Assembly: GCA_904063045.1 (NCBI GenBank)
Contig: CAJFCJ010000003.1
Coordinates: forward strand, 2,838,504-2,902,503
Direction: 5' to 3'
Source of the DNA: Dimorphilus gyrociliatus
Taxonomy: Eukaryota > Animalia > Annelida
DNA: 64,000 nt
Shown here: piece after piece, positions 471 through 25,600 of the stretch
How the letters are laid out: each line of letters starts with the position of its first letter
Numbering within the stretch: position 1 is the first letter of the stretch
Program-made: the position numbers and the translations under genes
The notes under the pieces: model-generated
What the model saw: the letters and a program-made list of their open reading frames with translations, nothing else
Told to the model about the DNA's origin: nothing
Databases searched by the model: none

Positions 471-1101
471 GGAGCGGAGTAGTTTCGTGAGGAAGATAGA
501 AAAGCCGAGGGACGTTGATATTTCTAAACTTAGGTCTTTCTTAACATCTGATGGGGTGTTAATTATTGAAGCTCCGATGCCTCCTAGATCGTTAAATATC
601 AAGAAATTTCATCATTCACCTAGTACAATATCTAGGTGTAGATCATCGCCTCCTAGTTCTCCAACAAATTCTAGTCCCCAGACTCCATCTCACTTGCTGA
701 AGCCAAACATTCCTACTTTTTCTGGACAAAATGGAGAAAGAAGAATGTCATTACTAATAGAAATTGGAAAGTGCTTTAAACCAAAGGAAATCGCTGTTCA
801 AATATTAAAATCCGATAGGATAATGGTAAGAGCGAAACACGAAGAAAAAACAAAAGAGCTACAATCCAAGTCAAAGTTTTCTAAAGATTACGACTTAAGC
901 GAACCTATTGAAAGGTATACGCTTAGAGCGGGTTTAACAGAGGATGGCAGATTATTAATAGGTGCTTTGGGTAAGAACCATGATGCTATTACTAAATTAG
1001 CGGCTGTTGAACAAATTACTAAGGATATTGCTGCCAGGTCTAGTTCCTGTAATGTGTTAGATTTTGCTAACTTCCCTCCGGCGGTTGTTCCGCAAATCTA
1101 A
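471..1101 (+). CDS. Small heat-shock protein with two alpha-crystallin domains; last exon only, 5' part lies upstream of the window
   Basis: Acceptor ttgactacAG at 469-470 opens ERSSFVRKIEKPRDVDISKLRSFLTSDGVLIIEAP (end of an ACD). A Ser/Pro-rich linker follows, then a second ACD (FKPKEIAVQI...VRAKHEEK...FSKDYDL...LRAGLTEDGRLLIGA). Stop TAA at 1099-1101. Confidence 0.85.
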
Positions 1102-3237: not shown

Positions 3238-4296
3238 TTTGTATTTTGCCCCTGGACGCCAAAACTTATACCATATGAGAATCAACACAATACTAAAGTC
3301 TTTTGATTCTATAGCATGAGAGGGTTTAACCGTAAATAGTTTAATTAAAATTTATTACAGTAATGGAAATATAAAGACTTAATTTAGTGTTATATTGTAT
3401 AAATGTCCATACAAATATACAGTGTAAGATATAATGTATACTATTATCTATAAAAAATAGGAGCTTTATCGCTTTTAAGCTCTATAATACAAGAATACAA
3501 CGTCCATTGGCAAATTGAATAAAGACAAATGAATTAATCATTAATATCTTTATAATATCTCTTTATTCTAGCTATTCCATTGCTATCGTTAAAAATTTTA
3601 CCAAGGTACTTTTATGTTTTTTTAGATAAATAGAAAAAGTGGACAAAATCGTCGGGTAAATGCACCAATTCGATTCGACTAATTAGATTTTACAGGGTGA
3701 AAATAAAGGCTAATTAACACTTAGACTGAATTTTTAAGTTCTTTTAAATAGTTTTATATCCTTAAAACAAAAAATAATCCTTATCCAATATTTTTAAATA
3801 GATCTTTTGGTAGTCTAACTCGAAGAGTGAGGATCAGTTTATTAAATATAGGCCTAGAAAAGAGACTGAGTGTCGATTATACGATATGCAATGGGCTGTT
3901 GTTAATTGAATGATGGTAAAAAGAAATATTTTCCTTTTTTATTAATTAGACTTACAGACAACCCATCAAGGCAAAGATTAATTTTTATTAATATATATAT
4001 ACATATATATATACTGTATATATGAAAACGTTGTAGAATCTACAAATAATTTACTTTATTATAAATATCAATAAATTAAAGAAATTTGAGCAAACTTTTT
4101 GTTTAAGATACGAATATTCAAGATATAAAAGGGTTAAATTCATAAAAAATGTCCACATATCACATATATTAATATACACGTATACTTATAATTTAGAATG
4201 TAAAGCATGCAAAGTTCGCTCCATTACTTGATTGAGAGTATTGTACAAGTCTTATTGCATTAGTCTGTAGAAATATCTTTGTCACTAAATTATCAG

Positions 4297-4305
4297 CGCC
4301 ATCTA
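4297..4305 (-). promoter_or_regulatory. CTCF-like motif core (acgtTAGATGGCGctg on minus)
   Basis: Same 9-mer in reverse orientation, about 140 nt past the ITPR-like stop codon. Confidence 0.45.
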
Positions 4306-4447
4306 ACGTCCTCGACAGTTATTTTAAACTATTTGGAGGACAATATCTTCGTTAATAGCAAACTTAAAGAGTGACATTTCAAGTATGCACCAATATTTTT
4401 GTTAAATATTTTAAGAGTTTTAAGATAGAAAAAACTGAAATGTCAAC

Positions 4448-7400
4448 CTATACTCTTTTATTACTCTTATGTTGCTGTTCCCATTCTAAGTCTCGTTTCC
4501 GTTCCATTGCCTTCATCTTCTCAGCCTCTTCTTCTTTTAATTTACTAGCAATGTAAAAAATCTGTTCCGCCATACTTTCCATTCTCATTTCATTCGAGTC
4601 TTCGTCCAACCGAAGCGATAAGGCTCTGTTCAATGGAAAAAAATCGTATGTTTCCCTCTCCAACTGTAAAAAAAGAGCTCATACAGAAGATATCTTTTAG
4701 AATTAGATTAAACTGCAAATAGTCGAATTACAAAAAATCAACTTACACTCTTGTGAACGTGCAATTCAATTGATGTATAATCGTTCCATCTTGTTTCATC
4801 TAAATGTATAAAGAAGAATAAATAAGCCCAAAGGTTATGCTCCTTTTTCACATGTTCCTCAAATCCCTAATAATGCAAAGAGATGAATAAGCGTATAATT
4901 TAATATATGCAAATATAAGCAATTTTTTTACATACCCCTCCGTGATGTTCAAAGTCGTAACTTGCCTTTGAACAAATAAAACACGATGATCTCATATCAT
5001 TTTCAACTTGCCATTTATTATCTCTCAATTCAGAGAATGTGTCAACTATAATACCAAAGATAATATTCAAACCGATAGTTGTAATAATTAGCCAAAAGGT
5101 CAGATCGAATAATACTTTATATATATAATATGTAAAGTTTTTATCTTCAGGAATTTGTAGATATTCGTAAGCTCCAGTAATGAAGCCGTGATGCAAAACT
5201 GTTATAGCACACTCGTACATAGTACTGCAAAATAGACCATTCTTTCCTGGATATAAGTCTCTAAAGGCAGCAAAAGATATAAGGGCGTATATATATATGA
5301 AAACTAATCCGAATAAGAATACCCAAAGCATTGAATAGCCATTCAGAGTAACCGCTTTTATAGCCCTTTTTAACATTTGGTTGAATTGAGCAACGTGCAA
5401 CAAATGAAATGAGAAAAAATATCCCCAGAATATTGTTCCTAAAATAGAAAATATGAAAAGACCGATATACCAGAGAGTTTCAAATGACAAAAAGTTAACA
5501 CGAAGGTTTCCCTCTACCTCCTCTTCTTCCTCCTCTATATCTTCTTTATCTGATGACTTATATTTTCTTATAAATTTACCGATATTGGGTAATTTTGGTG
5601 AGTTTGTAATAAAATACGAAATAGTCACGCACAAAGTAACAGCATTATGAAGTCCGCCAAAAATGTAAATTATGATTGGAGTAAAATCATAACGATAATC
5701 AGGTTTAATCGTTGAACCACTCTGGGGGGCTTTCCAAGTTATCATTATTGTTATAAAGATGATTAGTGATATAAAGATCATTAACATATTAAATGGATAC
5801 CAAAACTTTACAAAGAAACGAGAAAATGGATTACTAAGCACTTTTCTTGTATATTTAATATCTCTAATGATATCTTTGCTCCACTCCATAAAATCTCTTA
5901 ATTTATTACTGGGAGATGAACGGTCAACCTCGTATTTAAATTTTTCCTTAACATCATCTCGAAGAACACTTCTATCTTTTACTCTGAAGTATACCTTTTG
6001 CAGTTGATTATCTGCATTAAAAGAAGAATAAGTTAGATATTTTTAAATGGTTTCTTTTAAAAACTATGGTTTGATCAATTGTACAGACCTTTTAATATTT
6101 CAATGCTTAACGTCACTGAATTGTAAAATTTCCATATCTCTTCATTCTCTGGTTTGTATTTATAAGTTTTCTCTTCTATTTCGCATACTTTCAATAAGAA
6201 ATGGAAATACTTAAAGCCTAAATCGAGAACTTGTTCTTCTTTCCTTCTCTGATAGCATTCGATACATATTAGAAATATACTGTCAAAGTCTATTGCTTCG
6301 GCAACATCATAAGCAACTCCATGACCTCCACTATTTCGTTCTTCAACTAAAGATACTAATAAATTTATGACCGCCATTTTCAATCCCCTTATGCTCTCAT
6401 CATCGCATGTTTGAAATTGGGCTCCACGAAGAATGAAATTTATGTAATCTATTATTTTATTATCGAATACAACTGTTTGATTCGTCGCATTTCCGGATGT
6501 AAATTCAACGAGAGTACCAAGTAGTTCTGTTACTAGGCCTATACTGTGAGAGTCGATCGAAGAATATAAGAGACTTAGAAATCTAGCTGTTTCTGATATA
6601 AGATTGACAGATTTGATGTTATCAGGTTGTTCTCTTAGATAATCTTGAAGAGTAGTATTCTGACCGTCACACATTAAACCTAACAGTTTTAATACTAGGT
6701 TTATATAACCATCATCCTTATATTCCATATCTCCAACGTCACCTAGGGATTCTTTAACCATAGCCTCTAATTCCTCATCAGTCATCTCATTCGAAGTTTT
6801 AATGGGCACAACTTGATTCTTTTTGACTGATGAACTCCTCGAATTATTCTCAAAGGATATTTTAGTGTTTTCTAAATCTTTATTATTTCCCAAAATACTA
6901 CCGTTTGACGTTGATTTAATATTAATAATCTTACCATTACTTCGTCCCAAATTCTTACTATAGGAATAGGGGCTAGGAGAAATGTTTAATCTTGAAGAGG
7001 CCAGATTCATCCTGGATCCCAAAGCTCTAGAACCTAATTTTGCTCTTGATCCTAAGGCTCTAGAACCTAACATTATCCTGGCTTGTGATTTTCCAGATCC
7101 CACAATACCATTACCCATTGGCCCTTGTAATTCCATTGCTTTACCCTGTTGCATGGCCTTTTTAAGAGCTTTGGCTTGATCGACATTAATTCTGATCTTT
7201 TCTTGATGCTGGGCCATTAGAGATCTCTTTTCCTTTATTGCAATACTGGAATACTGCATTCGATTCTTAATTGCCTGGAAGAATTTTTCTTCTCTAGTCC
7301 CCAGGAAGTAATCTATTAAACTGTGTTGAACCCTTTCATTACCACCGAATAACATTGTTGCCTGAAAGGCTAAAACTTCTCTTATAATTTCTGAATTATT

Positions 7401-10400
7401 CTTTGCCAAATGGGAAAGAACGGGAAGTATTGCATTATAAGAGTTTAATGAATTTTGGACATCTTCAATCATTTTTAATGCTTTTGTATGTAATTTAGGC
7501 GTATTTAACCAATCTGGAGGTAGTTTAACTATTTCGTTGTGAATTAAACCCCTAATTAGTTTAATACATTTTACATCCAATTTTTCTTGAATAACAATAT
7601 CTCTTTCATTCACGTGATGAGTTGTAGATGATATCCTGCGAAGAACATATTAATAATATATTTTTTTAAATCGAATTATTCAAATATCGCTGTAAATCTT
7701 ATTAATCTAAGGAAATTGTTCTTACTCTAACTGCTGGACAAGCTTTCTTGCTAGAGCGTAGCGTTTATCAATTACTTTCTCCTTTTCGTCTATGAAAACA
7801 CTAAGGTGATCTTGAAATTCTTGACCTAGAGGTAGTATCTCGTCACCTTCGGGGTCAAAGTAATATTCGTCGGACGGATAACCCGTTTGAGCTCGCACGG
7901 TGTTCTCTCCGCCATATATTATTGCAAAATTTTTTGAAAATGTATTTAAAAGGGTGTTTATCTCTTCTTCGTGTTGGTAATCTTCGTCATATTGCTTCCT
8001 ACTTTCGGATTTTAGGCATTGAACATTACCACTTTTTGCAAATATTTCTTTAAATTCTTCCATAACAGCGGAAGGTATATTGGAAAGTTGACTTAAAACA
8101 GACCTCATACAATAAACAAGATGATTCATATGCGTTGGATTCGATATTAGATCAACTGTTTTTCTAGTAAAGTACATTAAAGACTCGCCTAGAGTTTGAA
8201 CAATAGTTTCTTCATTTGAATAGTTTTCTTTATCTATTTGATAGTGAATGCTAAAGAAAACTTGCAGGAAAGGTAGGGCCGCGTCAAATAGAAAGTGTAG
8301 AGTACTGTGATGAGAAATATCTCCTCCATGTTCTTTTTCCGAGTGTTCAACGCTAAAGATGAGCAATTTGTAAGATAAAAAATAATAATATGTAGGCTTA
8401 TATTACAAATAAACTTTAGTCGAGTTGTTATTTTTTGCAACGTTGTTTTTTTAACGAAAAGAATAGTCATTCAGTGAAATAAATGTATGTTATTATATTG
8501 GATAAGATATAAAGGGTATATAGAATTTAGCCTACTTACGAATTAGTTGGAGCTTTCTTTAGTAAATGTATTACAGCTTCTGGGTTATCCTCGGCGTATT
8601 TTGCAGTTGTTTGAAAGTGTTTCGATAATTGTTCTATAAACGTCCACATGTTCCTAAATATAATGAATTAAAAGTAACTAGTGTTTACAGAATACAAATA
8701 TAAAGATTAGATTACTTGTTATGATTAATTTCGTTGGGTGCCGAATCTATTCCTCCTCCAGCTGTATTAAGATAAACCCATAAAAGGAATCTTAAATATG
8801 GTCTTTTTAGATGATTATCTATGTCTGTTTTATTTAGTACATCTAATAGTTCATTTATAGTAAAGATAGTTTGGCATTGAGTTTCAATAGACTGATTTTC
8901 TCCTTCTGCACAAGTTGCCAATAGATCAACAAGAGATGCTAGATAGTCTGCTTCCTCATTTGTAGATTTTAATAGGTTATTACGTTTTTCAACAGGTTGA
9001 TCAATAACAAATGCAATATCTGTTCTGAATTGCATGAAATATTTCATTACGTACGCTTGATTGCGTTTCAGAGGTAAATCTAATTCTTCAACTTTTACCA
9101 ATGCATTAAGTACGTCCAAAAATTGAGGTGCTTTCGATTTATGCTTAGCAACAAGATGCATTAACTTTTGAATATGTTGAGGGAGAACATTCATACAAGT
9201 ATCTTTATTTCCCGTAAACACCTCTACTAGTGCCTCACCAAGTTCAGGCTCTGCTCCTTCGACTGTTAATAATATATCTAATCTATTAAATAGCCTTTCC
9301 TGTACAGTTTTATTCGATCTTGTTAAATGCTTTAATAAAAGGAAGGTATGAGCTAAAACTCGTCTCATTCCAGAATACTGATCTTTCAAATCGAAATCTA
9401 ATGGTAGAGAAAATATGGCAAAGCAACTTGAAATGATACTATGATTGTATAATATAGCCTGATTCATTGGATGAGGTTCTTCCGGTTCGTTTTCAAGTGA
9501 ACAAAATTTTCTAAATTCATCAAGAATTTCAATCATTTGTTCAATTTGCTCGGAAGACATTTTAATAGTGGTTAATCGGTTCATAATTGGTAGTAATTTA
9601 TGTATCTCTTTTTGAACCCTTGACGATTCGTCGTTTATTAGGATTTGAGCTTGAATAGCTCTTTGAAATAAGTTTTCGTTACTCGTAAAAAATCTATTTA
9701 TAAGACTCATTGATCCTGTAACCATAGTATCGTATTCATATAATGATAAATCTTTGAATATATCTATAAAGTCGATATTAAGTCCTGCGAATAAGCCAGA
9801 TTTTGCTGACATTTCCTTAAGTCTCTTCATTGCTGTTGATGATAAACTGAAAAAGTATATATTAGAGAGATTTGTTTCTTTTTATGGTTATTATCTATAT
9901 AAATTACCTTGGACTTGGTTTAAACTCTCTTGTGAGTAACTGGCCTAAAGTAGGTGAACAATCAGGTTTATTTGATTCTTCGTAGATCAATTTGAATTCT
10001 CTTATGAATCTCTAATGGTTTTGTGAAATGATTGTAAACATTTTGTATTTACAGTATATACTCTACTATAATATTTTACCTTTAATTTTGATTCGAAACG
10101 GTAATTAAATACAAGATCTAGGACTCTTATGGCTTGAACTTTTGCGTCAACGATTGCTTTTCCTTCGCGACTTTGTTTGTATCTGTCAATAGTTCGGTAA
10201 TGTTTCATTACTTCGCTCGATATTTTATCTTTGGATTTGTATGGCTTATCGTTTCTACCATCTAAAAGATTAAAAAATGGGGGAAGCAATGCTCGAATAT
10301 CGTCTCTATATCTATAAAATCCAAGGCTTATAAGGTAGTGCACTAATCGCAGAACCTGTTCAATAAGAACATTATGACCGATATCAGAGGCAGTCATGTC

Positions 10401-12047
10401 TTTGTTATCATCAAAAAATTTTGAAAGCCAGACATGTAGTTCTTTAAAGTGTTCTGTTCCACTAGTAGGCAGATCATCATGATTCAAAACTTCATCTTCA
10501 TCTAATTCATCATAGGAGAAAGTTAAATTAATTCTCTCCATGACCGCTGAATTTTTGTCAATGTCAATAAATAAACTTATTATTAAATTACAGTACTGAG
10601 CTCTTAATTGATCAGGTAGCATTTCATCACTTAGACAGAGATAAGCCTCTTCCCAAGTCAGGTAGCATAAGTCGTTAGCTATAATATTAATTGGGATAGG
10701 GTTTCTTCCATGACAAAGATTTTCGAAAAGATCAAGCTGATGTTCCAAAAATAATGTTTCATCTTTGCCAGCTGTTTCCATAAACTCCTGGAGGGGTTTC
10801 CAATTATGCTTTTTTGTTGCTACGTAGACAACCTTTGGAGTTTTTCCTATCTTTTCACCTAGTTCCGTTAAATAGACACAACTCCTGTCACCATCCTTTA
10901 ACCACTTCTGAGCAATATACGACTGATTTTCAGGAATAGATACTCCATCACAAACGCATAGTACACTTAACAAATCTAAATAATGATAATTCTTTTTCAC
11001 TTTAAGTAAATCAACAAATTCATCGATATGTTCCTTATTTATTCTATCAACTATCTTTCTATTGTCTCTTATTAGCTCCATAACCATCTGAGTAGCGCTT
11101 AATCCTTAAAAGAAACAAAATAATCATATACTATAAAAATCAAATCAATATAGAAAAGGACATAGTAAACACTAAGAAAAATATCTTACCAACTTCTCCC
11201 CCAACTGAGATTTGAGTTTTAAAAAAGTGTATGTATTTTGCTATATATAGTTCATTCTTTCTACTATTGCCCATTAAATAGGTATATAAAAGATTATAGC
11301 ATTCAACACATATGTTTGTCATAAAAACAGAATCTTTGTTTCCTCTATTGGGAAATTGTAGAATTTGAACAACTAATTCAACAATCATTAAATTCCTCAT
11401 CAGTTTTTGTCTATTCTTATCGGGTTCCGAGTTGACAATTAAAAAATCTTCTAATTCATTTATTGCCGATACAATCTCATTGCATTCACTTTCCGTTATA
11501 AACAAACCGGATGTTTTCTATTTAAATACAGTAGAATAGTTATTTTAATATATTTTAGTTAATTTATGAAAACTAATTAACCATTTCAATTAACTTTAAC
11601 AAGACTGGTACAATACCAGCAGCGTAATAGAAATTTCTACAATCGATATTCTCAACTTTCTGTAACGTGAAAGCGTCGTCGTATTGCATTTCTTTAATTG
11701 CTCCGATTGTTTTTAAACATGCAGTTGTCCATTTTAAACTATCCATTGAATTTTCACCATAACCAATAACCTTTGAAGTTTTAGAATCGACAAAGTCATC
11801 TATATTAACAATTTTTTTATGTTAATTATTCAATATCATCTTAAAATATAAATAAGTTTTCATACCCAAACTGGCGTGTAGCCAATACCCGCTAACTACA
11901 TGCTCAATTCGGCAATAAGTCTCATATTCAATGTTATCATGTTCCTAAATTGAAAGTAGAATACGTATGAACTGAATGGACTTTTGAAAACGCTGTCAGA
12001 TTATTGAATCAGCTAACAATAAGCTTTACTATATATATATTTATATT

Positions 12048-12094
<47 letters not shown>

Positions 12095-13389
12095 TAACAA
12101 TCAGAGCTTTTCGTAGTGTCTTTCTCTCTAAAATTAAACTCTCCTTTTATTTCGTTTTTACAAAAAGGTGCTAGTTTCAGCACATTCCTCTGATTGCTTA
12201 AGATTATCAGTTATTCGTTTAAATAATGATTCTTTATATTAGTATTAGTAGTTTTATGTACTATAAACAAATAAGTAAAGTATACGTACTTGAATAACTG
12301 GATGTAATTTGAATACAGTGTTAGGATTATTGGCGTCTTTAGTTAAAGAGACACTTTCATGATTCACCAGTAGATAGAGTCTTGTACAGACATGTTTTAA
12401 ACGGCATTGCTGATGCCATTTGACTTCTGATCCATCTAGATTACTTGATAATAATTCAACCTGCCAATATGTTATTGCCGACGTTGATGGAAATAATGTT
12501 TTTGGTATATTTTGATCTACAGGTCTAATCCTTAGGTGAACTAGTAAAAAATAATAAGTTTTAAGCGTTCAAAAGCATCGTAATATATAAATCTAATACA
12601 ACCGTCATCTGCTATTTCTCCCGTTAGTAGTCCTGATGCACATAGGTATGCTTCTATTTCTTTATGAAAAAATCTCACGAAATGACCAGACTTTAAAAAA
12701 TTTGTCATTTCTTTTGAAGGCTTATAACGTCTTAAGAGTCTAAATCCAGATTGTTTAACTGATAAGTTCAATTCTAAACTATCTTTATAAACTGATCTTG
12801 ATGGTAATTTAGACTTGCTAACATGAAGATATTGTCCAGGCGTTTTTACAGACTCGAAAACAATTTGATCTTCAACTTGCACAATATCGCCTTCAGCTTT
12901 TACTTTATATCTTGGCATGATTTTAAATTGAGCATTTTTAGCATTATACTCTGATAGAAATACTTTCATACTTCCAGATTTTGTTGTAGCCGTTGTTTCT
13001 GTACTACTATGTATGAACTTTTGAGTAAACAAGTGTCTTAGTTGTATCGTTTGTCCATAAAGGACTTTTCTACCAAATTGTCTCTTTTTCTCATTTTCGT
13101 TATCATCCGATTCAGCTTCAGCTGCCAGTTGTAATTGAGCAAGTTTTTCATTCGAGATGGACTCATATTTTGCCTTCCTAAACTTCTTGTCAAATTTATA
13201 TCGATTCACAACACATATTTCGAACGTAACAGACGCTGGATCAACGGCGACAGGATTTTGTCTATCCTGTCCTGATTTAACGGCAATATCCGTATGAATA
13301 GAACTTGAAAGATACGAATATACAAATCCGTGAGAATCTTCTGAATACAAGCAAATAAAGTCTCCAACATGCAAAGACTCAACAGCCAT
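4448..13389 (-). CDS. ITPR: Inositol 1,4,5-trisphosphate receptor-like Ca2+ channel, divergent class; about 14 exons, roughly 2,500 aa by hand tally
   Basis: N-terminus MAVESLHVGDFICLY; MIR/beta-trefoil (FGRKVLYGQTIQLRHLFT, VRFFH); RIH (RQKLMRN, SRKNELYIAK); RIH-associated (LGLMCDGQNTTLQDYLREQPDN); TM region with LNIIFGIIVDTFSELR; C2H2 zinc site CFICS...FEEHVKKEHNLWAY; YDFFPLNRALSL. Introns checked include 12541-12602 and the one ending gtacgt at 12289. Confidence 0.93.
7015..7070 (-). repeat. In-frame 33-nt-period coding repeat (LGSRALGSR twice) within ITPR-like
   Basis: gatcccaaagctctagaacctaa at 7015-7037 and gatcctaaggctctagaacctaa at 7048-7070. Confidence 0.85.
12030..12093. repeat. (TA)n microsatellite in an ITPR-like intron
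   Basis: Pure TA run at about 12052-12090 with an imperfect left flank. Confidence 0.95.
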
Positions 13390-16660: not shown

Positions 16661-19600
16661 ATGATATACTTGATTTTAAGTGTTTTGTGTGGGATAACAA
16701 TAAGTTTTTCTGGATTTTCTCCTGAAAAATGCGGACTTAGTTATTGTTTTAATGGAGGAATTTGTATACGTCAGGTTTGTTTCAATTCTTCTTTTATACT
16801 CGATTGTGCTCTGGCCTCTCGCCTGTTGGCTAAACTAGAGTACGTTTATATTTTTATGTAAACTGTATTGCAAAACTGCTGTTAAATCTACTAATTAATG
16901 ATATAAAATGAATAAAGTATTTAAATAACATATACTACTTATTTTGAATCCTTAATATCTTCTTTAATCTTATAGAATAACGAAAGTATTTGTCAATGTC
17001 CTCCGTCATCCAAAGGGAGATATTGTGAATTTCCCTTCGAGGAAATTCAAGAATGTGAGGCTGGCTGGAATCTTTTTGAGGATATTGGATTTGAAAGTTG
17101 CATAAGCTATAATTCATACCCGTTAACATTCTTTCAAGCAGTGACAGAATGCAAAAATCAAGGAGGATGGCTACTAGGAATAGATAAAAATGAAATATAT
17201 CTTGAAAACTTAAATCAAAGATTATCGTCAATACCTTATATAGAAAGTAAAACTTTTTGGATAAACTTTGAGCTGTCAAATAAATACATCTATAGAAAGA
17301 CAACATTCCCAACGTATTATGGGACTATTGGCGATAAATTTAACAATACCTTTGTACTTTCCTCATTTGATTTAAATAATATTTGTCCATATATCAGTGG
17401 CAAATTTATCACTGGAAAATATGAATCAAACCAATATTACACAGATAATTGCTATAATAAAAAACAGTACATCTGCCAAAAACCTTTAAAAATTGAATTA
17501 AAAGTTGATGTGAGTTCAAGACTATGTCAATATAATTGGACCTATTCACCAGATCTCAATAGATGCTTTTTACCTTTCGAAGTTAATTATAGTTATTCAA
17601 ATGGAGCTAGTTTGTGTTCACGTATGGGTGGCCACATTCCCATTTCCAATTCTGTTTACAACAGTAAGATCCTACATCGAGTGATACTTATTAAACAGAC
17701 TTCTGTTGGTTGTGGTCTAAATAGTCCTTGTAGAAATGGAGGAATATGCGAAATTAAAAACTATCGCAGACTTTGCAAATGTCCTTTAGGATTTTATGGG
17801 AAGTACTGCGAATTACTTCTTGAATACGATTCATGCTCTTCTAATCCATGTGGTAGTAACGGAGAATGTATAAGGCTTATAAAGGGTATTTCTCCAATCT
17901 ATATTTGTAAATGTGCAAGCGGCATATTCGGAGGCCCTTGTCCTAAACGTGCATGCCTAAATACATCTTTATGCAAACCAAATGGCATTTGCTTAGAACT
18001 TCCAGGAGGTACCTATCAATGTCAATGTCATGAAGGATACGGAGGAGTTGATTGCAGCATCACTTTCGGTACTGGTTTACCTCCTTTAAGCGAAGTATAC
18101 GGTAGTCTCCCTTCAAAATACTCTACAAAAAGTCCAATGGTTCCGCAGAAATCTTCTTTAACTTGTCCCGTATGCAGAACAACAAAACTTTGCAATTCAT
18201 CAATCAGATACGCGAATAATTGCGTAAGTATACAACAGTTTATAAAGGATATATAACTACTTTATTCCCTTGAATATAGGTTTCTTGTGTTAGCGAAATA
18301 AGTCTTAATGGATCAAAAGCTATCATAAATAAACTTAAATGCAGTCGGGAGAAATGTGAATATTATATTAATTGCATAGATTCGAAATGCGAAACAATTA
18401 AGATGTGTTGTTCGAGTCGAAGTTGTAATTTAATGATGAAATGTTCACCTAATACGTATAGTGGATTCTGTCGGAAACATTGCCATTGTAAAACATCTTG
18501 CGGTGATTTAACCGGTGAATGTGAAACGCCAGAATGTAAAAAGGATTTTTACGGACGCTCTTGTGACATATTACATAGAGAAATAAAATTTTGGCTATAT
18601 ACACCTCAACAAATGTCTAAAACGACAGAGAGATCTTATTCAACACCATGGATTAAAGATACAGAGAAACAATTAAAACTATGCTATAATTCAGACTTTA
18701 GAGGGAAGTGGGAACAGACTGAATGTCACAAGAAACTCTCAGTCGTTTGCGAAAAAAAACCCAACTATAGTTAGTTTACTTTTAATATTTAACTTGAATG
18801 TTTCCGTTTGATATAAAGTGTTTAATGCATTGAATTTTTTTGTAGATATTAATCCGGAAATTCAGATTAAAAGATACAGGAAACCGACAACAAGTGATTT
18901 TGGAATTGAATGCTCTTTTGAAGATTTATCACTAAAGGCTTCAGTCTTCTGGAAGAAAGATAATCAACTTTATCGATTTAGAAACAATGCGGATAGAATC
19001 GATGTTGAGGACATTATTACTCAATCAAAAAATTACGTAAGTTAACAATTTAAAAGGATATTAAAGTTGATACAGTATTAATAATTTATTCTATTTTCAC
19101 ATACGTAAAACATAAAAATACAGGATTCCCATTTTCGTTATTCTTCGCTAGAAGGATTTTACGTATGCATTGTAAACTATCAATATTTCGAAATATATTC
19201 AAGACCAATTCGGATCGAATTTGAAGACATCAAAATAACTTCAATCTTAAAGATAGAAAGAATTTTGGATCAATTCGAAGCTTTTAGCTTAGGAGAAAGA
19301 ATTACAGAAAAATTAAAATACCTCTTAAAGAATAATGAATATTTTCCATTTATAGATCAATCATTTAACATTAATATCGATCTAAAGAAATTTAGAGTTG
19401 ACCAATCAACAATAATCGAAAATGAGATTTACGTCAACTTTTTCGATGATGAATTTAATAAAAATTTAACATTTATTAAAGAAACATTAAAGTATGGATT
19501 TAATAAATTTATTGACAATATTTATTCATTTAATTTATTGGAAAATACTGATAAAGTTACGTTAATGAGATTGGCTGAAAGTGATGAATGTCAAGAAATC

Positions 19601-21802
19601 GTTATACAGAATTCAACTTTAGACTACAGTGCAAAATTCTCTGAAGCTAAAATTGGTACATTTTCAAAAACAACAGCTCAGTGTGCTGATGGAAGTCCAT
19701 TAGGAACTGCAATATGTTTAAAAATAGACTCAGAATATCCTACTTTTAAGAATATTAAATGGAAATCTAAAAGAGATTGTTACCCTGAACAGCTAAACAT
19801 TACACTGCAATTATCGAAGGTGTCTAAAATGTCGCAAAGTTTGACTAATCAATCGGATTCTGGACAAATTACTCATATGACTAAGACAATCATTAAAAAT
19901 CAGAATTTATCTTCAACTGATATTTCATATGTTGGTGAAATATTGGAAAATTTACAAACAACAAAAAGAGGTGTTGAAAAGCAATCTATAACTGATGTTG
20001 TTGAGATTGCTAATGAATTATTAAAAGCCCCTGCTGAACAGATTATGAAAGCTCAAATGACAACGAAATCGAGCTCAAAAGTAATTAAAGCTATTGAAAA
20101 AGTTTGTCATAATTGGAGGGGATCGACTAAAGCAAAAATATTTACGCCAAGAATTTCTGTTGAAGTTTGGCAAGGAAGACAAGTTCCTTTCAACAGTTTC
20201 CTCATTAAGAACATGACTGACGATCATCTATTACGAAATGAATCGTTTATTATGGATAATTTACCAGATTATCGTCTACTAAACGATACAGCGGCTGGAA
20301 TATTTTTTGAAAGCAGTTTAAACTTTTCAGATGAGATTCGAATAGTGACATCTGTATTCTCAAATACAAAACTATTTTGGAGAAATGCTACACAGATTCC
20401 CATTGGTAAAGTTATTAGTGCTTCTATAACAGACAAGAAATTAAGGAATTTAGATCCTCCTATATCAACTGTTTTTCAACCTGATAATAAGATAGATAAA
20501 TTACAAGAGGATAGGCTCAAATGTGTTTTTTGGGACGAGAAGGTTGAAAATTGGTCTGGTGATGGTTGCTATTTTGATCAAACAATAAACGGTAGAATAT
20601 TCTGTAAATGTGATCATTTTACCAATTTTGCTGTCCTTATGGACATTGAACGGAATGGTGCGTCTGATGATGAAGCACTTTCATATATATCTATTATTGG
20701 CATATCATTATCAATAGCTGGTTTGGGTTTTATTATTGTTTCTTTTATTGTTTTCAGGTAATAAAAACATGGCCACTTAATTAATTAACATACTAATTAA
20801 TTGCTGTTGCAGATCTTTTTCGAAGAATAAGCCTCAAATTTTAAGATTTAATTTATCATTATCGTTAATTGCTGTCAATATTATTTTCCTTGTTGGTATA
20901 AAAAGAACTGAAAACGACACTGCTTGTATAGCAATATCTGGACTTTTATATTATTTTCTTCTAACATCTTTCCTATGGATGTTGGCCGAAGGAGTCTTAG
21001 CTTTTATTAACTTTGTAAGAATATTTGATAATTATACACCAAATTTTCTCATAGTTGCAGCTATATGTTGTTGGCGTAAGTATTTATTTCTCATATTAAG
21101 TTCTTACTCTGCTAGATAGAGCATTAATTTTATTTCTTACCCTCTTCCTAAATAGTATTACCTGGCATTCCGATTACTGTTTTAGCAGTAATTGATAAAA
21201 GTCTATTTCTTGGGTTTGACGACTTGTAAGTATATTGCTTGGCTAACTGAATAATATTGAAAGAAATTTTACAACTAAATAGGTGTTGGTTAAGTGAAAC
21301 CCCATTTTATTACGGATTTGTTTTACCCGTTGGATTAATAATCCTAATTAATTTAATCTTTTTGACATTAACCTTGAAAAATCTATGCAAAAGACCAGAA
21401 GCTGCTAATGGAATAAACAAGAACAAATCTTCGAAGTACTACTTCTTATTAAGAGCCTTTCTTCTATTCTCTTTCATAATGGGGGTTACTTGGATATTTG
21501 GCTTCCTTGCAATAAAAGATGCTAAATTTACTTTCCAACTTATATTTTGCATTTTAAATGCGTTCCAAGGTTTCTTTCTATTTTTATTGTATATTCTAAT
21601 GGAGAGAAAAATACGTGAAAATTGGATGAAACTATGTGGCTGTTTACCAAGGACACAACTAAAAAAACCTAGCTTGAACCAAAAAACGAGCAAAACATCA
21701 ATAGATAATTTAATCATCAATGACAAAAAGTCAGAAGACGATAATGTGTCTGATTATATGGCTTTTGAGAAAGAGAATGAAATATCCGAAATATCAGGAT
21801 AG
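16661..21802 (+). CDS. Adhesion GPCR paralog 1 (SP-EGF-CTL-split CTL[3 EGF, LU-like, laminin-type EGF]-Ig-SEA-HormR-GAIN-7TM)
   Basis: Signal peptide MIYLILSVLCGITISFS; exon 2 from 16976 (NNESICQCPP); Ig motifs GIEC..VFWKKD..EGFYVC; GPS CVFWD...WSGDGC...CKCDHFTNFAVLM at about 20520-20645; family-B 7TM with WMLAEG and FCILNAFQGFF; stop 21800-21802. All exon phases join. Confidence 0.9.
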
Positions 21803-22122
21803 CATCTTTCACTATTTTCTTCCATGCACCGTACATTGTATTTTTTTTTTGTTTTTTTTTTGTACTTTTATGAACTTTATGAAGAAGAATTGAATAGTTT
21901 CTTCTTTTCATTATTTTTCAGCTATAAGAATTTTACTTGAACAGAAAATTAAAGACAATTAAGGAAAAATAACTAGAGGATAGAAATCATTATAAACTTA
22001 TTTTTTATAATCAGTTTCTTGTTGGTTTTTTATCTTTTCACTTTTAATTTTAGTCATTATTTTCTTCCTATGAGAGATTTTTTCTTTTCACTGTTAAAAA
22101 AACTATGAAATGAAGATATAAC

Positions 22123-22255
22123 AAAGAAGGAAAAAAGAGAAAGAAGAAAAGTAACAAGAGATGAAGAAGCATAAGACGGAGAAGAAGTAGAAGAAGAAGG
22201 AGAAGAAGAAGAAGACAAGAAGGAGACGAGGAAAACAAAGAAAAGACGTAGAGAA
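22123..22255. repeat. (GAA)n-rich purine tract between adhesion GPCR 1 and 2
   Basis: Imperfect gaagaagaag repeats. Confidence 0.8.
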
Positions 22256-22644
22256 TATTAAAAAAAAGTAATATATAGTTAGAAGATTAAGGCCTAAAAA
22301 ATTTTTATTCTTCGAAGTTTTTAGTTTTTCTTTTTTCCTTTGTTTGAACTATTTTTGGAAAGGAAACACTTTCTTACTGTTTTTCACAGCACATCGTATA
22401 ATGAGTATATTAATACACACTTATGTACTACACAGTTTATTTGCATATATTTTATTATTATTCTAAAAATATTATTTACATTTATATGTTGAAAAGATAA
22501 AAATAGACACATCTCGTAACATCACGTGATCAGCATTGAAAAAATGCTGAAACAAGAAGTAAATTTTGATAGAAAAAAATAAAAAATATCTTTATTTTTT
22601 TCATTTTCATAGTTTAATCGACGTCTACTTATAATTAAATAAGG

Positions 22645-25600
22645 ATGATTCTAACAAGATATCTGTACATATTTCTATTATTTTTAAGAGTTTATACTTC
22701 TGCTAAAAAGTTATCAACTTTAAAAGATTCATGTGACGATCGTAGTTGCTTGAATGGAGGCACATGCGTTATGACTAAGGTATGTAAGAAAAAAATATAA
22801 AAGATAGACAGCTTTTCTCAATATAAATAAATTAACAATAGACTAAGGAGAGAATATGTCAGTGTCCCCCGACATTTACTGGGAAATCTTGTGAAATTTT
22901 TGAGCAGACTTTCCCAACCTGTGAAACTTTTCAATATCCCATAACAAACTCAAACACAGGAAAGAAATACTGTCTTCTATTAGATCCAAGTATTGCTCTT
23001 GTAATTACTATATTATTCTATGATATCCAAAATGATTCATTTACAGATAATTGGATATTTGGTAATACCTTTGAAGATGCTAAAAGACGTTGTGAAAAGA
23101 CAGGCGGTTGGATGTTCAGTTTGAAAAATTATTTATCTTTCTCAAAAGATGTATCGACCATATTCGAAAATAAAGTAGCTATACCTTCAAACTTCGAGAT
23201 TTGGAACGGATTTGAAAAGATACAATCCTCGATATATTCTCTCTCTGAATATCCAATTTATTATGGAAAGATCAGTGACAACGATCAAACTCTAGCAAAT
23301 TACGATAATGTTAAAATTTGCTCAACATTAAATTCTCTTAGTAGTTCATTCACTCTTGCAGCAGGCTATTGTAAGGAAACTCTATCGTTTGTTTGTGAAA
23401 AGCCTCAAATGACAATAGATGACTTAGACTTGCATATAAATGTGACATTTTGTCCAAAGGGATGGTACTATTCTCACTGGTATAGAAAATGTTTTATGTA
23501 TTCACTCCAAACAGTTACTTTTAACGAGGCAGAGAGAAAATGTCATGAACAAGCATCAAATTTGACTCGTCCAACATCGAAAATATACAATCTGCTTCTT
23601 TATCATATATCGTTGATAGAAGAAACTAAGCGTAAATGCGCAACTATCAATAGTCAGTGCAAGTATGGTATAAGATGCAAATTTACATCAGAAAAAAATA
23701 TTTCCAAGTGTGAATGCTCTGCGAATCCTATATGTCTTGCCTCTAAGCCCAAGTTAGATAGACAGTTCTGTGGACCAACGGATAAGAATTGCACGGCCAA
23801 TGGTTGTCAAGACGGATGGTATGGCGAAAAATGCGATATTTTTTATGAGCCATCTAACATTTGGATTGGGATAAAAGCTAATGACGAAAGTTTGGATGCC
23901 GGTGGATTAACAAATCCTGAATCGTTCACAATTGAAACAAAGGGGCAAGGTCCTTGCTTAAGTACAAGTAGTAGCGGTACGTGGAAGGGAAATAGTTGCT
24001 CTGAAAATTTGACTTACATCTGTGAAATGGAACCGAAATATGGTAAATTGCTAAATTTCATTAATTGATGTCATAAACGTTCTTTTTCTATATTTCCAAA
24101 TACAAAGATCTAAAAGTAAAAATTAAGAAATCTTATATGAAAAGGAGAGATGACATGGGTCTTGAATGTGAAGTTCCCTTTGAAGGAAAGGAATTTCTTA
24201 AAGGGGTATACTGGAAGACTTTGCATGGCTATCATAGATTCGAACCGGATGAAACTAGAGTATCGATAAATCAAATGATTACAGAGATGACAGAAAGAAA
24301 TGAGGTAAATAATTTAAATTTTGTAATATATACAAACTTTGAATAATTATCTATGTTTCTTTTCTAATATTTGAATATTAAAGTTGGATATTGTCGATGA
24401 ACTTATTGTTGAAGGCCAATACACCTGCATAGCAAACTATGGACCATTCTCCATTCAGTCAGAACCAGTATCAGTTAGCTTCACATATTTAAATCTTGAA
24501 TTATATTTAAAGTTACCAAAGTTAGTTTTAAACAAGTTATCCCAACAACTAAGCAAGATTATTACGGCCAACCTGAATCGCTATTTCCAAAATACATCGT
24601 TATTTCAACTGGCATCGGATGTATTGACCATAGCAAAGCTAGAGGACACTTTCAATGGTAGTGTTATAATCTATAATACATTAAAAGTTTTCCAAAAATC
24701 AAGATCTTATATACTTACTGATGAATTTATATTATCGCAACTACGAAATCGTTTGAATGAAATGATTGATACAAACTCTCTTTTTAATAATGCGAATCAA
24801 ATTACTCCTGTCGAAATTCTAAGTTTTTCTTTTAAAGGCGAATGCGAAGAAGTCATTACTGAACATCCTGAAGGATTTAAAGTAAAATTCAATAGGGTAA
24901 AAGTAAATCATCAGTCTACAACAACACGCTTATGTTTAGATGGCAAACCAATAGGTACATGTAATTGTACGAAAGAAAACTATAAATATTCGTGTAAAGA
25001 GAATTTGGATTTCAGGAGAAAACAAGACTGTTATCCTACTTCAACAAATAATTCTGTTGAAACTGATACGTTACTGAAACTATCATTGATGAAAATAAGT
25101 AAAAGTAATATAGATGAATTACTTAATAAGTCAAAGGATATAGTTCAAAGGATTGACTTGAATAAACAAGATTACATATATACTTCTTTAATATTAGAAA
25201 ATATTGCACTTTCTCTAATTAAATTAAATCCTAAGCAGATTGTAAAGATCACGGAAATTGCTAACGAAGTGTTAAAAACTCCATTCAGAATAATTGATGA
25301 AGCTCAAAAGACGGCAAATTCAAGCTCAATAATGACTAATTCTATTGGATCTTTAGCGGAAAATGCTGAAATAGATAAACAGCAACTTAAAATTGTCACA
25401 CCTAGAATTTTAATGTTGATAGCTGATACTCAGAATAGTTCGTTCAATGTATTTTTTCATAATGGCTCATCAGCAGATAATCTTTTTCATAATGATTCAA
25501 TATCAATTGACAAAACAGATAAATCCTCATTTTTGAATAATTCTATCAGTGGAGTTTATTTCGATAGTGACCTATTTTCCAATTTAAGTCGTAGATTTTT

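What the first reader, a model, noticed from the sequence alone, without database searches (positions are those of the whole stretch)
5161..5196. IP3R-like channel lacks the GGGV/IGD selectivity filter
Seen: after the pore helix (TMYECAITVL) the sequence is HHGFITGAYEYL, whereas the TM6/gate (LNIIFGIIVDTFSELR) and the zinc finger are conserved. Established: canonical IP3Rs and RyRs carry GxRxGGG(V/I)GD here, and mutations in it alter conductance and selectivity. Inference: this is a second, divergent class of IP3R-family channel with a different filter, possibly altered Ca2+ selectivity or a non-conducting role.
Basis: partly seen in the sequence, partly recalled or inferred. Interest (0 to 1): 0.7.

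Follow-up and report, generated by a model that had tools for sequence, protein, structure and literature searches.

The report
IP3RB-type channel with rewritten pore filter
This annelid gene is a real, expressed member of the little-studied "IP3RB" branch of the IP3-receptor/ryanodine-receptor channel family. Its ion filter lacks the usual glycine-rich motif, as it does in every bilaterian relative sampled, so the class is already named and only its ion handling and ligand remain untested.

Summary
On the minus strand, 5158-5193 encodes HHGFITGAYEYL where canonical channels have GLRSGGGVGD. The given coordinates (5161-5196) sit one codon off.

**Not an artefact**
- A 7,960-nt spliced transcript contig matches the window at 100%.
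- Its exon 4935-6011 runs uninterrupted through the filter.

**Identity**
- The gene spans 4451-13389 in 14 coding exons and encodes 2,540 aa.
- It is Dimorphilus gyrociliatus DgyrCDS2578.

**Rest of the genome**
- A canonical IP3R (GGGIGD, contig C20) and a canonical RyR (C19) are both present.
- There are eight divergent paralogs, including this one.

**Phylogeny**
- All eight fall in a bilaterian clade (support 100/99).
- Its nearest relatives are sponge, Capsaspora and choanoflagellate proteins, apart from IP3R-A and RyR.
- This matches the published IP3R-B/IP3RB family, which vertebrates have lost.
- In my sample the sponge and choanoflagellate members keep GGGLGE. All sampled bilaterian members have replaced it with one of two conserved spiralian motifs (HHG..G.Y, RYGLIGD.FE) or a variant.

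**What is conserved**
- The S6 gate, zinc finger and Ca2+-sensor residues are kept.
- The IP3-contact TTGR loop is lost, but the basic cluster remains.

**Verdict**
Three unfollowed notes of this scan describe the same thing on other pieces of this genome.

The parts
4451..13389 (-). Whole coding region of the IP3RB-type channel gene (DgyrCDS2578, 2,540 aa, 14 coding exons). Exons: 13389-12604, 12541-12290, 11944-11867, 11800-11582, 11517-11188, 11102-10080, 10011-9910, 9848-8715, 8652-8539, 8351-7725, 7634-6090, 6012-4936, 4866-4747, 4663-4451. Boundaries are good to the codon.
   Evidence: Exact exon-by-exon match of P0199 to the window. Splice joints from transcript contig X2 for 4300-10250. 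Pfam domains Ins145_P3_rec, MIR, RIH x2, RIH_assoc and Ion_trans on the exon ORFs.
4935..6011 (-). Channel exon: TM helices, pore helix, filter, S6 and the first half of the zinc finger, all in one uninterrupted exon.
   Evidence: The X2 contig piece covers 4935-6011 with 0 differences. Best PDB sequence matches are RyR (8e-24) and IP3R3 (9e-21). The AlphaFold2 model has pLDDT 88, and its best fold matches are the IP3R3 and RyR1 TM domains.
5179..5220 (-). Pore helix MYECAITVLHHGFI (P0199 2335-2348).
   Evidence: Helix 166-179 of the model; coordinates.
5158..5193 (-). Variant selectivity-filter segment HHGFITGAYEYL (P0199 2344-2355). G-A-Y-E-Y-L takes the place of G-G-G-V/I-G-D.
   Evidence: The segment is conserved in the C1 paralog as HHGFITGIYDFL although synonymous sites are saturated.
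5023..5136 (-). S6 helix and gate (FTYYIYKVLFDLTFWLIITTIGLNIIFGIIVDTFSELR). The positions of gate residues F2586/I2590 of IP3R1 hold F and V.
   Evidence: N217, F220, G221, I222, I223, D225, T226, F227, L230 and R231 are invariant or nearly so across 60 sequences.
4972..4983 (-). Zinc-finger Cys pair (CFIC).
4837..4854 (-). Zinc-finger His pair (HVKKEH), in exon 4747-4866.
4765..4785 (-). NDYTSIE. Its T lies at the position of the Ca2+-site Thr (RyR1 T5001, IP3R3 T2581).
   Evidence: Motif-level alignment from my knowledge of the RyR1/IP3R3 Ca2+ site; coordinates.
6657..6677 (-). LMCDGQN. Its D lies at the position of the Ca2+-site Glu (RyR1 E3893, in CEGHN; IP3R CENHN).
   Evidence: HMMER alignment to RyR1 numbering, query 306-366 against 3871-3931; coordinates.
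6492..6512 (-). LVEFTSG. Its E lies at the position of the second Ca2+-site Glu (RyR1 E3967, IP3R LTEYCQG).
   Evidence: Motif alignment. The E is present in 98 of 112 family members matched by pattern.
12512..12541 (-). VHLRIRPVDQ, the counterpart of the IP3-contact loop VFLRTTGRQ of canonical IP3Rs. One Arg is kept; T266, T267, G268 and R269 are not.
   Evidence: Alignment to this genome's own canonical IP3R exon and 36 family members.
11395..11418 (-). KNRQKLMR, the counterpart of R504-E-R506-Q-K508-L-M-R511. The basic cluster is kept (K, R, K, R).
   Evidence: HMMER alignment to mouse IP3R1 residues 488-586; family table.
11254..11268 (-). NSRKN, the counterpart of Y567-R568-K569. Y is replaced by S; R and K are kept.

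Best explanation
The gene encodes a full-length, transcribed member of the IP3RB (IP3R-B) branch of the IP3R/RyR superfamily. Within that branch it belongs to a spiralian subgroup I call B1.

It most likely forms a homotetrameric endomembrane cation channel. The moving parts are those of IP3Rs and RyRs: the S6 gate, the cytosolic Ca2+-sensor site and the C-terminal zinc finger. The pore loop has been rebuilt:
- The flexible GGGxGD/E stretch is reduced to T-G.
- It is followed by a short helical turn, A-Y-E-Y.
- That turn puts an aromatic residue and a Glu (E2353) where the second and third glycines and the Val/Ile sit in canonical channels.

I infer that a ring of four E2353 side chains, together with the acidic turret residues (PED), supplies the cation-attracting charge that D2550 (IP3R1) or D4899/E4900 (RyR1) supply in canonical channels. 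On that view the channel still conducts cations, but with different conductance and Ca2+/monovalent selectivity.

It is probably not gated by IP3 in the canonical way. The TTGR contact loop, K249 and Y567 are lost. The conserved basic cluster suggests some other anionic ligand or regulatory contact.

Shown here: the gene, its transcript, its clade, the conservation pattern and the canonical paralogs elsewhere in the genome. Inferred: tetramer formation, conduction, the role of E2353, and the ligand.
For: **The gene is real**
- A spliced 7,960-nt transcript contig is identical to the window, with GT..AG introns.
- The exons match DgyrCDS2578 exactly.

**Family architecture**
- Pfam finds Ins145_P3_rec, MIR, RIH, RIH_assoc and Ion_trans.
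- The TM-domain model (pLDDT 88) is closest to IP3R3 and RyR1.

**Clade**
- In the IQ-TREE PMSF tree the window protein sits in spiralian B1 (100/99).
- B1 lies inside a bilaterian clade (100/99).
- That clade lies inside a holozoan group with Oscarella, Capsaspora CAOG_04510 and Salpingoeca (99/91).
- The group is separated by 100/99 from the clade holding this genome's canonical IP3R-A and RyR pieces.
- The canonical genes are confirmed.
- The taxon set matches the published IP3RB family: Lottia, Capitella, Saccoglossus and leech, and no vertebrate, fly or nematode (PMC7992859; hit list).

**The filter is under constraint**
- Among 46 distinct B1 segments: H13 45/46, G15 44/46, Y21 41/46.
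- Among 50 distinct B2 segments: R13, G15 and G18 50/50, D19 48/50, F21 47/50, E/D22 49/50.
- Window gene against its C1 paralog: pN 0.14 and pS 0.81 (saturated), with the filter kept.
- 18 of 21 coding differences in a related environmental transcript set are synonymous, including all three near the filter.

**Pore machinery is kept**
- S6 and gate residues are nearly invariant across 60 sequences.
- The Ca2+-site positions hold D, E and T.
- The zinc finger is present in 107 of 112 members.

**IP3 site**
- TTGR, K249 and Y567 are replaced family-wide.
- The positions of R504, R506, K508, R511, R568 and K569 stay basic.

**P-loop model**
- Window: pore helix, then two coil residues (T-G), then the helical turn AYEY.
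- Oscarella control, which keeps GGG: four coil residues (SGGG), then a three-residue turn.
Against: - There are no functional data for any bilaterian IP3RB. Permeation, ligand and location are all inferred.
- The structural models are monomers, so which side chains face the pore is not shown.
- Single substitutions in the canonical GGGxG are known to kill IP3R pores (G2498S in IP3R2, PMC7939385). A wholesale replacement could therefore be non-conducting.
- In many molluscan B1 members the position of E2353 holds Thr, with acidic residues at other positions. The "Glu ring" is therefore not a family constant.
- I could not read the defining paper (Alzayady 2015). Equating my clade with their IP3R-B rests on taxon composition and secondary sources.
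- That CAOG_04510 is their CO.IP3R-B is an assumption.
Confidence: 0.7

Rival explanations
1. It is functionally an ordinary IP3-gated Ca2+ release channel. The filter sequence differs but permeation and ligand are essentially those of canonical IP3Rs, and the eight paralogs merely provide tissue-specific isoforms.
For: - Domain architecture, S6 gate, Ca2+-site residues and zinc finger are all retained.
- Positions equivalent to R265, K508 and R511, which from my knowledge are the three residues whose joint mutation abolishes IP3 binding, are all basic.
- IP3R and RyR pores are wide and weakly selective, so they may tolerate sequence change.
- Public annotation calls these proteins IP3 receptors.
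Against: - The genome already has a canonical IP3R with every IP3-contact residue.
- T266, T267, G268, R269, K249 and Y567 are replaced family-wide.
- According to the abstract of Alzayady 2015 as I recall it, and as paraphrased in PMC9113742, the Capsaspora IP3R-B did not bind IP3.
- Point mutations in GGGxG abolish function in canonical channels.
- Within the B2 subgroup the replacement motif is nearly invariant, which points to a specific new function.
Confidence: 0.15
2. It is a non-conducting (pore-dead) family member that acts as a scaffold, sensor or regulatory subunit rather than as an ion channel.
For: - The loss of all but one glycine of GGGxG, and of the terminal Asp, resembles dead-pore mutants.
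- Two Tyr side chains now flank the presumed constriction.
- Nobody has recorded a current from any IP3RB.
Against: - The pore-lining S6 segment is conserved from Capsaspora to annelids in the sample, and F220, G221, I222, I223, D225, T226 and F227 are invariant or nearly so across 60 sequences.
- The new filter motifs are themselves under purifying selection.
- Luminal acidic residues are retained next to the filter.
Confidence: 0.12
3. The variant filter is an artefact: a missed micro-exon, a mis-assembly, a retained intron or a decaying pseudogene.
For: None found.
Against: - The spliced transcript contig is identical to the genome across one continuous exon, 4935-6011.
- The reading frame is intact over 2,540 aa.
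- The same motif class is found in dozens of species.
- There is strong purifying selection.
Confidence: 0.01

Closest known systems
IP3R-B / IP3RB family (Alzayady et al. 2015, Mol Biol Evol 32:2236; leech ip3rb1/ip3rb2 in Heath-Heckman et al. 2021, PMC7992859)
   Same: - The taxon distribution matches: Capsaspora, choanoflagellate, sponge, hemichordates, amphioxus, molluscs, annelids, brachiopods, nemerteans and flatworms.
- No vertebrate, arthropod or nematode appears among the best 120 hits.
- The architecture is full-length IP3R-like.
- The IP3-contact loop is not conserved.
   Different: - Nothing contradicts membership.
- This gene is one of eight IP3RB paralogs in a 78-Mb genome, against two reported for the leech Helobdella.
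- The accessible papers do not discuss the pore filter. PMC7992859 contains neither "pore" nor "selectivity".
Canonical IP3 receptors (ITPR1-3; IP3R-A)
   Same: - Same domain order.
- Same six-TM channel domain with pore helix, S6 gate (F and I/V), Ca2+-sensor residues and C2H2 zinc finger.
- The basic cluster of the alpha-domain of the IP3-binding core is kept.
   Different: - GGGVGD is replaced by GAYEYL.
- The long luminal S5-P loop is absent.
- TTGR, K249 and Y567 of the IP3 site are replaced.
- The channel exon matches IP3Rs only at E ~1e-17 to 1e-21, against 5.5e-150 for this genome's true ITPR.
- It falls in a separate clade.
Ryanodine receptors
   Same: - The channel exon's best PDB sequence matches are RyR entries (8e-24).
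- The P-loop aligns to RyR1 without gaps.
- The Ca2+-site motif is CDGQN against CEGHN.
   Different: - 2,540 aa rather than about 5,000.
- The Pfam scan of the seven exon ORFs found only Ins145_P3_rec, MIR, RIH, RIH_assoc and Ion_trans, and no other domain.
- GGGIGDE is absent.
- A true RyR lies on contig C19.
Non-bilaterian members of the same branch (Oscarella lobularis P0279, Salpingoeca rosetta PTSG_02461)
   Same: - Nearly the same S6 segment.
- The same IP3-site pattern.
- Sister position in the tree.
   Different: They keep a glycine filter, GLLSGGGLGEAL. Within my sample the loss of GGG is therefore specific to the bilaterian clade, with a separate change in Capsaspora.

Membership tests
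IP3R/RyR superfamily | N-terminal Ins145_P3_rec plus MIR, two RIH domains, RIH_assoc and a C-terminal six-TM ion-transport domain. | tested here: met
   Pfam hits on the exon ORFs. The same set is precomputed for P0199.
IP3R/RyR superfamily | Channel-domain fold like the solved IP3R and RyR TM domains. | tested here: met
   The AlphaFold2 model has pLDDT 88.1. The top Foldseek hits are IP3R3 (6dqj) and RyR1, with probability 1.00 and TMq 0.52-0.58.
Canonical IP3R (IP3R-A / ITPR) | Selectivity filter GGG(V/I)GD after the pore helix. | tested here: not met
   GAYEYL occupies those positions. The filter exon is continuous in mRNA.
Canonical IP3R (IP3R-A / ITPR) | Complete set of IP3-coordinating residues: R265, T266, T267, G268, R269, R504, K508, R511, Y567, R568, K569. 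| tested here: not met
   An Arg aligns with R265, and 504, 508, 511, 568 and 569 are basic. T266, T267, G268, R269 and Y567 are replaced, as is K249.
Canonical IP3R (IP3R-A / ITPR) | Groups with ITPR1-3 orthologs in a tree. | tested here: not met
   It is separated from this genome's canonical IP3R piece by a 100/99 branch. The true ortholog is on C20.
Ryanodine receptor | A protein of about 5,000 aa with SPRY and RyR repeat domains and a GGGIGDE filter. | tested here: not met
   2,540 aa. The Pfam scan found only IP3R-type domains. The filter is absent. The true RyR is on C19.
IP3RB (IP3R-B) | Membership of the holozoan clade distinct from IP3R-A and RyR, present in invertebrates and absent from vertebrates, fly and nematode. 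| tested here: met
   Tree; hit taxa. The species named as having IP3RB in PMC7992859 (Lottia, Capitella, Saccoglossus, leech) are represented in my clade by proteins from the first three species. Caveat: the published reference accessions could not be checked because the defining paper is not held.
IP3RB (IP3R-B) | No high-affinity IP3 binding, as reported for Capsaspora CO.IP3R-B. | not testable with these tools
   Only the residue pattern can be read. It is the same in the window protein and in Capsaspora CAOG_04510.

The most novel reading that the evidence does not exclude
Bilaterian IP3RB proteins are a functionally distinct class of intracellular channel. On this reading they are not gated by IP3; the conserved basic pocket binds another anionic ligand. 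The glycine filter was replaced once, at the base of Bilateria, by an aromatic-plus-acidic filter (consensus G-hydrophobic-hydrophobic-x-G/D-x-F/Y-E/D). That filter would give a different ion selectivity, for example a high-affinity Ca2+ site of the EEEE type or a monovalent preference. The family then split into two conserved spiralian subtypes. It has expanded to eight genes in a miniature annelid, possibly for cell-type-specific roles like that of leech ip3rb2, which marks touch neurons.
Probability: 0.3. Interest if true: 0.7.

Novelty: new member of a known kind. Interest (0 to 1): 0.4.

Why it matters
IP3RB is a third ancient branch of the Ca2+-release channel family, alongside IP3R-A and RyR. 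Many invertebrate phyla keep it, vertebrates, flies and nematodes have lost it, and it has essentially no physiology attached to it.

This report adds two points:
- In my sample, every bilaterian member has replaced the glycine filter that is treated as a hallmark of the family.
- The replacement is strongly conserved in two spiralian motif classes.

That gives a concrete and cheap hypothesis to test: selectivity and conductance of a B1 and a B2 channel, and the role of the conserved acidic and aromatic positions. It also warns that the automatic names these genes carry ("ITPR1/2/3-like") probably overstate what is known about their ligand and permeation.

For the scan, this explains several similar first-reader notes in this genome as one gene family rather than independent oddities.

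Tried and rejected
- **Defining paper not held.** Alzayady et al. 2015 could not be opened by DOI or PMC id. I could not check whether it already describes the IP3R-B filter, or which Capsaspora accession is CO.IP3R-B.
- **Literature searches.** Filter motifs returned only canonical-channel papers, and one term (GVGD) flooded the list. A whole-word search for IP3R-B found two versions of one paper.
- **Exons were not joined by me.** I searched exon by exon by reference until search for homologous proteins returned the public protein P0199, which matches the exons exactly. I used P0199 for full-length work after that.
- **Tree placement of own-genome paralogs.** Split paralogs entered the trees only as their longest single ORF pieces. 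The RyR piece (120 aa) is a long branch, so its position relative to IP3R-A is unreliable. I draw no conclusion on the published IP3R-B/RyR sister relationship.
- **Pattern tally of Ca2+-site residues.** The family-wide count was incomplete. The first site was matched in only 32 of 112 sequences, all with D. I cite it only as partial.
- **No tetramer prediction.** I did not run complex prediction. Its pass/fail score would not show pore geometry and would not change my odds of tetramer formation.
- **Monomer models.** They say nothing about which side chains line the pore.
- **Non-bilaterian search skipped.** I ran no further search on cnidarian, placozoan or ctenophore members. Placing the GGG loss at the base of Bilateria is therefore bounded only by sponge, choanoflagellate and acoel sequences.
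- **Scan notes.** The first word search of earlier findings returned nothing.
Full report
**1. What is at the coordinates**

The window is AT-rich animal DNA, about 30% G+C. The feature lies on the minus strand, in a 329-aa ORF (4900-5889) that is part of a longer open frame.
- The pore helix MYECAITVLHHGFI is encoded at 5179-5220.
- The string HHGFITGAYEYL is encoded at 5158-5193.
- The finding's 5161-5196 encodes LHHGFITGAYEY, one codon off.
- S6 with the gate (TTIGLNIIFGIIVDTFSELR) is at 5023-5136.
- The CFIC half of the zinc finger is at 4972-4983, and its His pair is in the next exon.

HMMER aligns the P-loop to RyR1 without gaps. GGGIGDE of RyR1 falls on GAYEYLQ. Counted from the first Cys of the CxxxxxC pore-helix motif, IP3R1's G19-G20-G21-V22-G23-D24 falls on G-A-Y-E-Y-L.

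**2. It is not an artefact**

One public run (X2) holds a 7,960-nt spliced contig identical to the window.
- Its exons are 4300-4663, 4747-4865, 4935-6011, 6089-7634, 7725-8352, 8540-8652, 8715-9846 and 9908-10011, continuing from 10080.
- All skipped parts have GT..AG ends on the minus strand.
- The filter exon is continuous and shows no sequence difference.

A marine metatranscriptome (X1) holds 90-99% identical fragments of a close relative. Of its 21 coding differences, 18 are synonymous, including all three around the filter.

**3. The gene and the organism**

A search with the closest full-length relative returned DgyrCDS2578 of Dimorphilus gyrociliatus (P0199, 2,540 aa). Every exon translation I tested is contained in it exactly. 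Mapping it back to the window gives 14 coding exons from 13389 to 4451.

P0199 served as the reference for full-length work.

Pfam finds Ins145_P3_rec, MIR, RIH (three exon hits), RIH_assoc and Ion_trans.

**4. The rest of the family in this genome**

Searching the 78-Mb assembly with the channel exon gives ten loci.

| Locus | Type | Filter segment |
|---|---|---|
| Contig C20 | Canonical IP3R | GLRNGGGIGDILRKP |
| Contig C19 | Canonical RyR | GVRAGGGIG/DEIE |
| C3 (this window) | Divergent | HHGFITGAYEYL |
| C1 | Divergent | HHGFITGIYDFL |
| C2 | Divergent | HRGLVDGIFN |
| C6 | Divergent | RYGLVGDYSEVL |
| C7 (first) | Divergent | RYGVIGDINENL |
| C8 | Divergent | RYGLIGNYDEV |
| C7 (second) | Divergent | RFGFIGELTEHL |
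| C23 | Divergent | RYGLIGNYDDV |

- The C20 gene matches IP3R1 at E 5.5e-150. Its N-terminal exons carry every IP3-contact residue.
- The C19 gene matches RyR2 at E 8e-115.
- All eight divergent loci also have N-terminal IP3R-type exons.

**5. Relatives elsewhere**

An exhaustive HMMER search found 3,267 related representatives. The best come from limpet, mussel, orthonectid, flatworm, nemertean, acorn worm and amphioxus.

The named search lists 120 proteins. They come from molluscs, annelids (Owenia, Lamellibrachia, Capitella, Dimorphilus), brachiopod, nemerteans, flatworm, hemichordates, amphioxus, an acoel, a sponge (Oscarella) and Capsaspora. There is no vertebrate, arthropod, nematode or cnidarian among them. 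Most are auto-annotated as "ITPR1/2/3-like".

**6. Phylogeny**

I built an IQ-TREE (LG+C20 PMSF) tree of 69 channel domains.
- A clade with GGG(I/V)GD proteins, including this genome's IP3R-A and RyR pieces, is separated by 100/99 from the rest.
- Within the rest, a holozoan group (99/91) holds Capsaspora CAOG_04510, Oscarella, Salpingoeca with its allies, and a bilaterian clade (100/99).
- The bilaterian clade comprises the acoel, a deuterostome group, and two spiralian subfamilies, which I label B2 (99/98) and B1 (100/99).
- The window protein is in B1, next to its C1 paralog, Intoshia, Lamellibrachia and Capitella.

This composition matches the IP3R-B/IP3RB family.
- PMC7992859 describes it as present in the bilaterian ancestor, lost in vertebrates, absent from Drosophila and C. 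elegans, and understudied. It reports leech ip3rb2 enriched in touch neurons.
- That paper does not mention the pore or selectivity.
- The defining paper is not held.

**7. The filter across the family**

Positions are counted from the first Cys of CxxxxxC.

| Group | Filter segment (positions 13-24) |
|---|---|
| Canonical IP3R | S-H-G-L-R-S-G-G-G-V-G-D |
| Sponge and choanoflagellate members of this branch | K/R-F/L-G-L-L-S-G-G-G-L-G-E |
| B2 (50 distinct segments) | R-Y-G-L-I-G-D-M/L-F-E/D (positions 13-22) |
| B1 (46 distinct segments) | H-H-G-L/F-V/I-D/E-G/S-x-Y-T/E/D-x-F/L |
| Hemichordates | RFGLIDGLQEYL |
| Amphioxus | RYGLMENLHKAI |
| Acoel | RYGVLEGIHNHI |

- In B2: R13, G15 and G18 are 50/50, D19 is 48/50, F21 is 47/50, and E/D22 is 49/50.
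- In B1: H13 is 45/46, G15 is 44/46, and Y21 is 41/46.
- Loop lengths are equal or differ by one residue, so these are substitutions and not a deleted exon.

In my sample the glycine run is lost in every bilaterian member and kept in the nearest non-bilaterian ones. Capsaspora differs independently.

The window gene and its C1 paralog differ at 81% of synonymous sites (saturated) but only 14% of non-synonymous sites. They keep LHHGFITG-x-Y-E/D-Y/F-L.

**8. Other functional sites**

*S6.* F220, G221, I222, I223, D225, T226, F227, L230 and R231 of the aligned channel domain are invariant or nearly so in 60 sequences. The positions of gate residues F2586 and I2590 of IP3R1 hold F and V.

*Ca2+-activation site.*
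- The RyR1 numbering puts E3893 (in CEGHN) on the D of LMCDGQN.
- The second Glu (in LTEYCQG) falls on the E of LVEFTSG.
- The Thr falls on the T of NDYTSIE. These last two are motif-level assignments from my knowledge of the RyR1/IP3R3 site.

*Zinc finger.* It is intact.

*IP3 site.*
- Family-wide, from Salpingoeca to annelids, the beta-domain loop reads VHLR-x-R-x-x-D-Q instead of VFLRTTGRQ.
- K249 is Ala and Y567 is Ser.
- The positions of R504, R506, K508, R511, R568 and K569 stay K/R.
- Canonical high-affinity IP3 binding is therefore doubtful, but a conserved basic surface remains.

**9. Structure**

An AlphaFold2 model of residues 2170-2480, built with a 60-sequence alignment, has pLDDT 88 overall and 86 over the filter block. 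It matches the IP3R3 and RyR1 TM domains best.
- In the window model the pore helix ends at I2348. T2349-G2350 are coil. A2351-Y2354 form a one-turn helix. S6 starts at F2363.
- The same procedure on Oscarella, which keeps GGG, gives four coil residues (SGGG) and then a three-residue turn.
- The P-loop fold is therefore predicted to be retained, with a shorter extended segment.

These are monomer models and do not show what lines the pore.

**10. Reading**

Shown here:
- A real, expressed IP3RB gene with a non-glycine filter that is conserved and shared by its bilaterian clade.
- Canonical IP3R and RyR genes elsewhere in the genome.

Inferred:
- It is a tetrameric, Ca2+-regulated endomembrane cation channel.
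- Its permeation properties differ from those of IP3R and RyR.
- E2353 and the neighbouring turret acids supply the negative charge.
- Its ligand is probably not IP3.

The alternatives cannot be excluded without experiments: an ordinary IP3 receptor in function, or a pore-dead regulator. Conservation of S6 and of the new motifs speaks against a dead pore. The loss of TTGR, together with the presence of a complete canonical IP3R, speaks against simple redundancy.

**11. Novelty**

The class is published and the gene is annotated, so this is a new member of a known kind. Two things do not appear in the papers I could open:
- The uniform loss of the glycine filter in bilaterian IP3RBs.
- The two conserved replacement motifs.

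I could not check the 2015 paper.

Three first-reader notes of this scan (s1-081695, s1-083352, s1-082118) describe IP3R-like channels with rewritten filters on other pieces of this genome. They very likely refer to the paralogs listed in section 4. None had been followed up.

Noticed in passing
L011:2746-2919 and L011:3194-3367 (G000 contig C20, canonical IP3R gene): The canonical IP3R has two tandem, near-identical copies of the exon that encodes S6, the gate and the first zinc-finger Cys pair. One begins EPLFIARIIYDLLFFFIV, the other ESLFIFRVIYDLLFYFIL. They look like mutually exclusive alternative pore exons.
   Followed up: no
G000 contigs C1, C2, C3, C6, C7 (two loci), C8, C23 (loci L001-L008, L010, L012): There are eight IP3RB-type paralogs (three B1-like, five B2-like) in a compact 78-Mb genome. 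Two IP3RB genes are reported for the leech Helobdella (PMC7992859).
   Followed up: partly
L005 (G000 C2:3752093-3755701): In the C2 paralog an intron interrupts the reading frame directly after the filter segment HRGLVDGIFN. This may be the place where an earlier first-reader note predicts a 6-nt micro-exon.
   Followed up: no
window 7002-7070 (-): A low-complexity repeat, LGSRALGSRAKLGSRALGSRMNL, sits in the linker of the ARM3 region of the channel protein. It lies inside a Ser/Asn-rich stretch with no match in the solved IP3R or RyR sequences.
   Followed up: no
window 17141-27299 (+), probably continuing from 28450: Tandem adhesion-GPCR genes. ORFs carry C-type lectin and EGF, then a GPS motif, then a secretin-family 7TM domain, at least twice in a row (Pfam).
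   Followed up: partly
window 487-1101 (+): An ORF with an HSP20/alpha-crystallin domain (E 3e-9) lies downstream of the channel gene's 3' end.
   Followed up: partly
window 4300-9250, run X1: A 2025 marine metatranscriptome contains fragments 90-99% identical to this gene, one of them spliced at the 6011/6089 joint. A close relative or strain of this annelid is therefore present in that environmental sample.
   Followed up: partly
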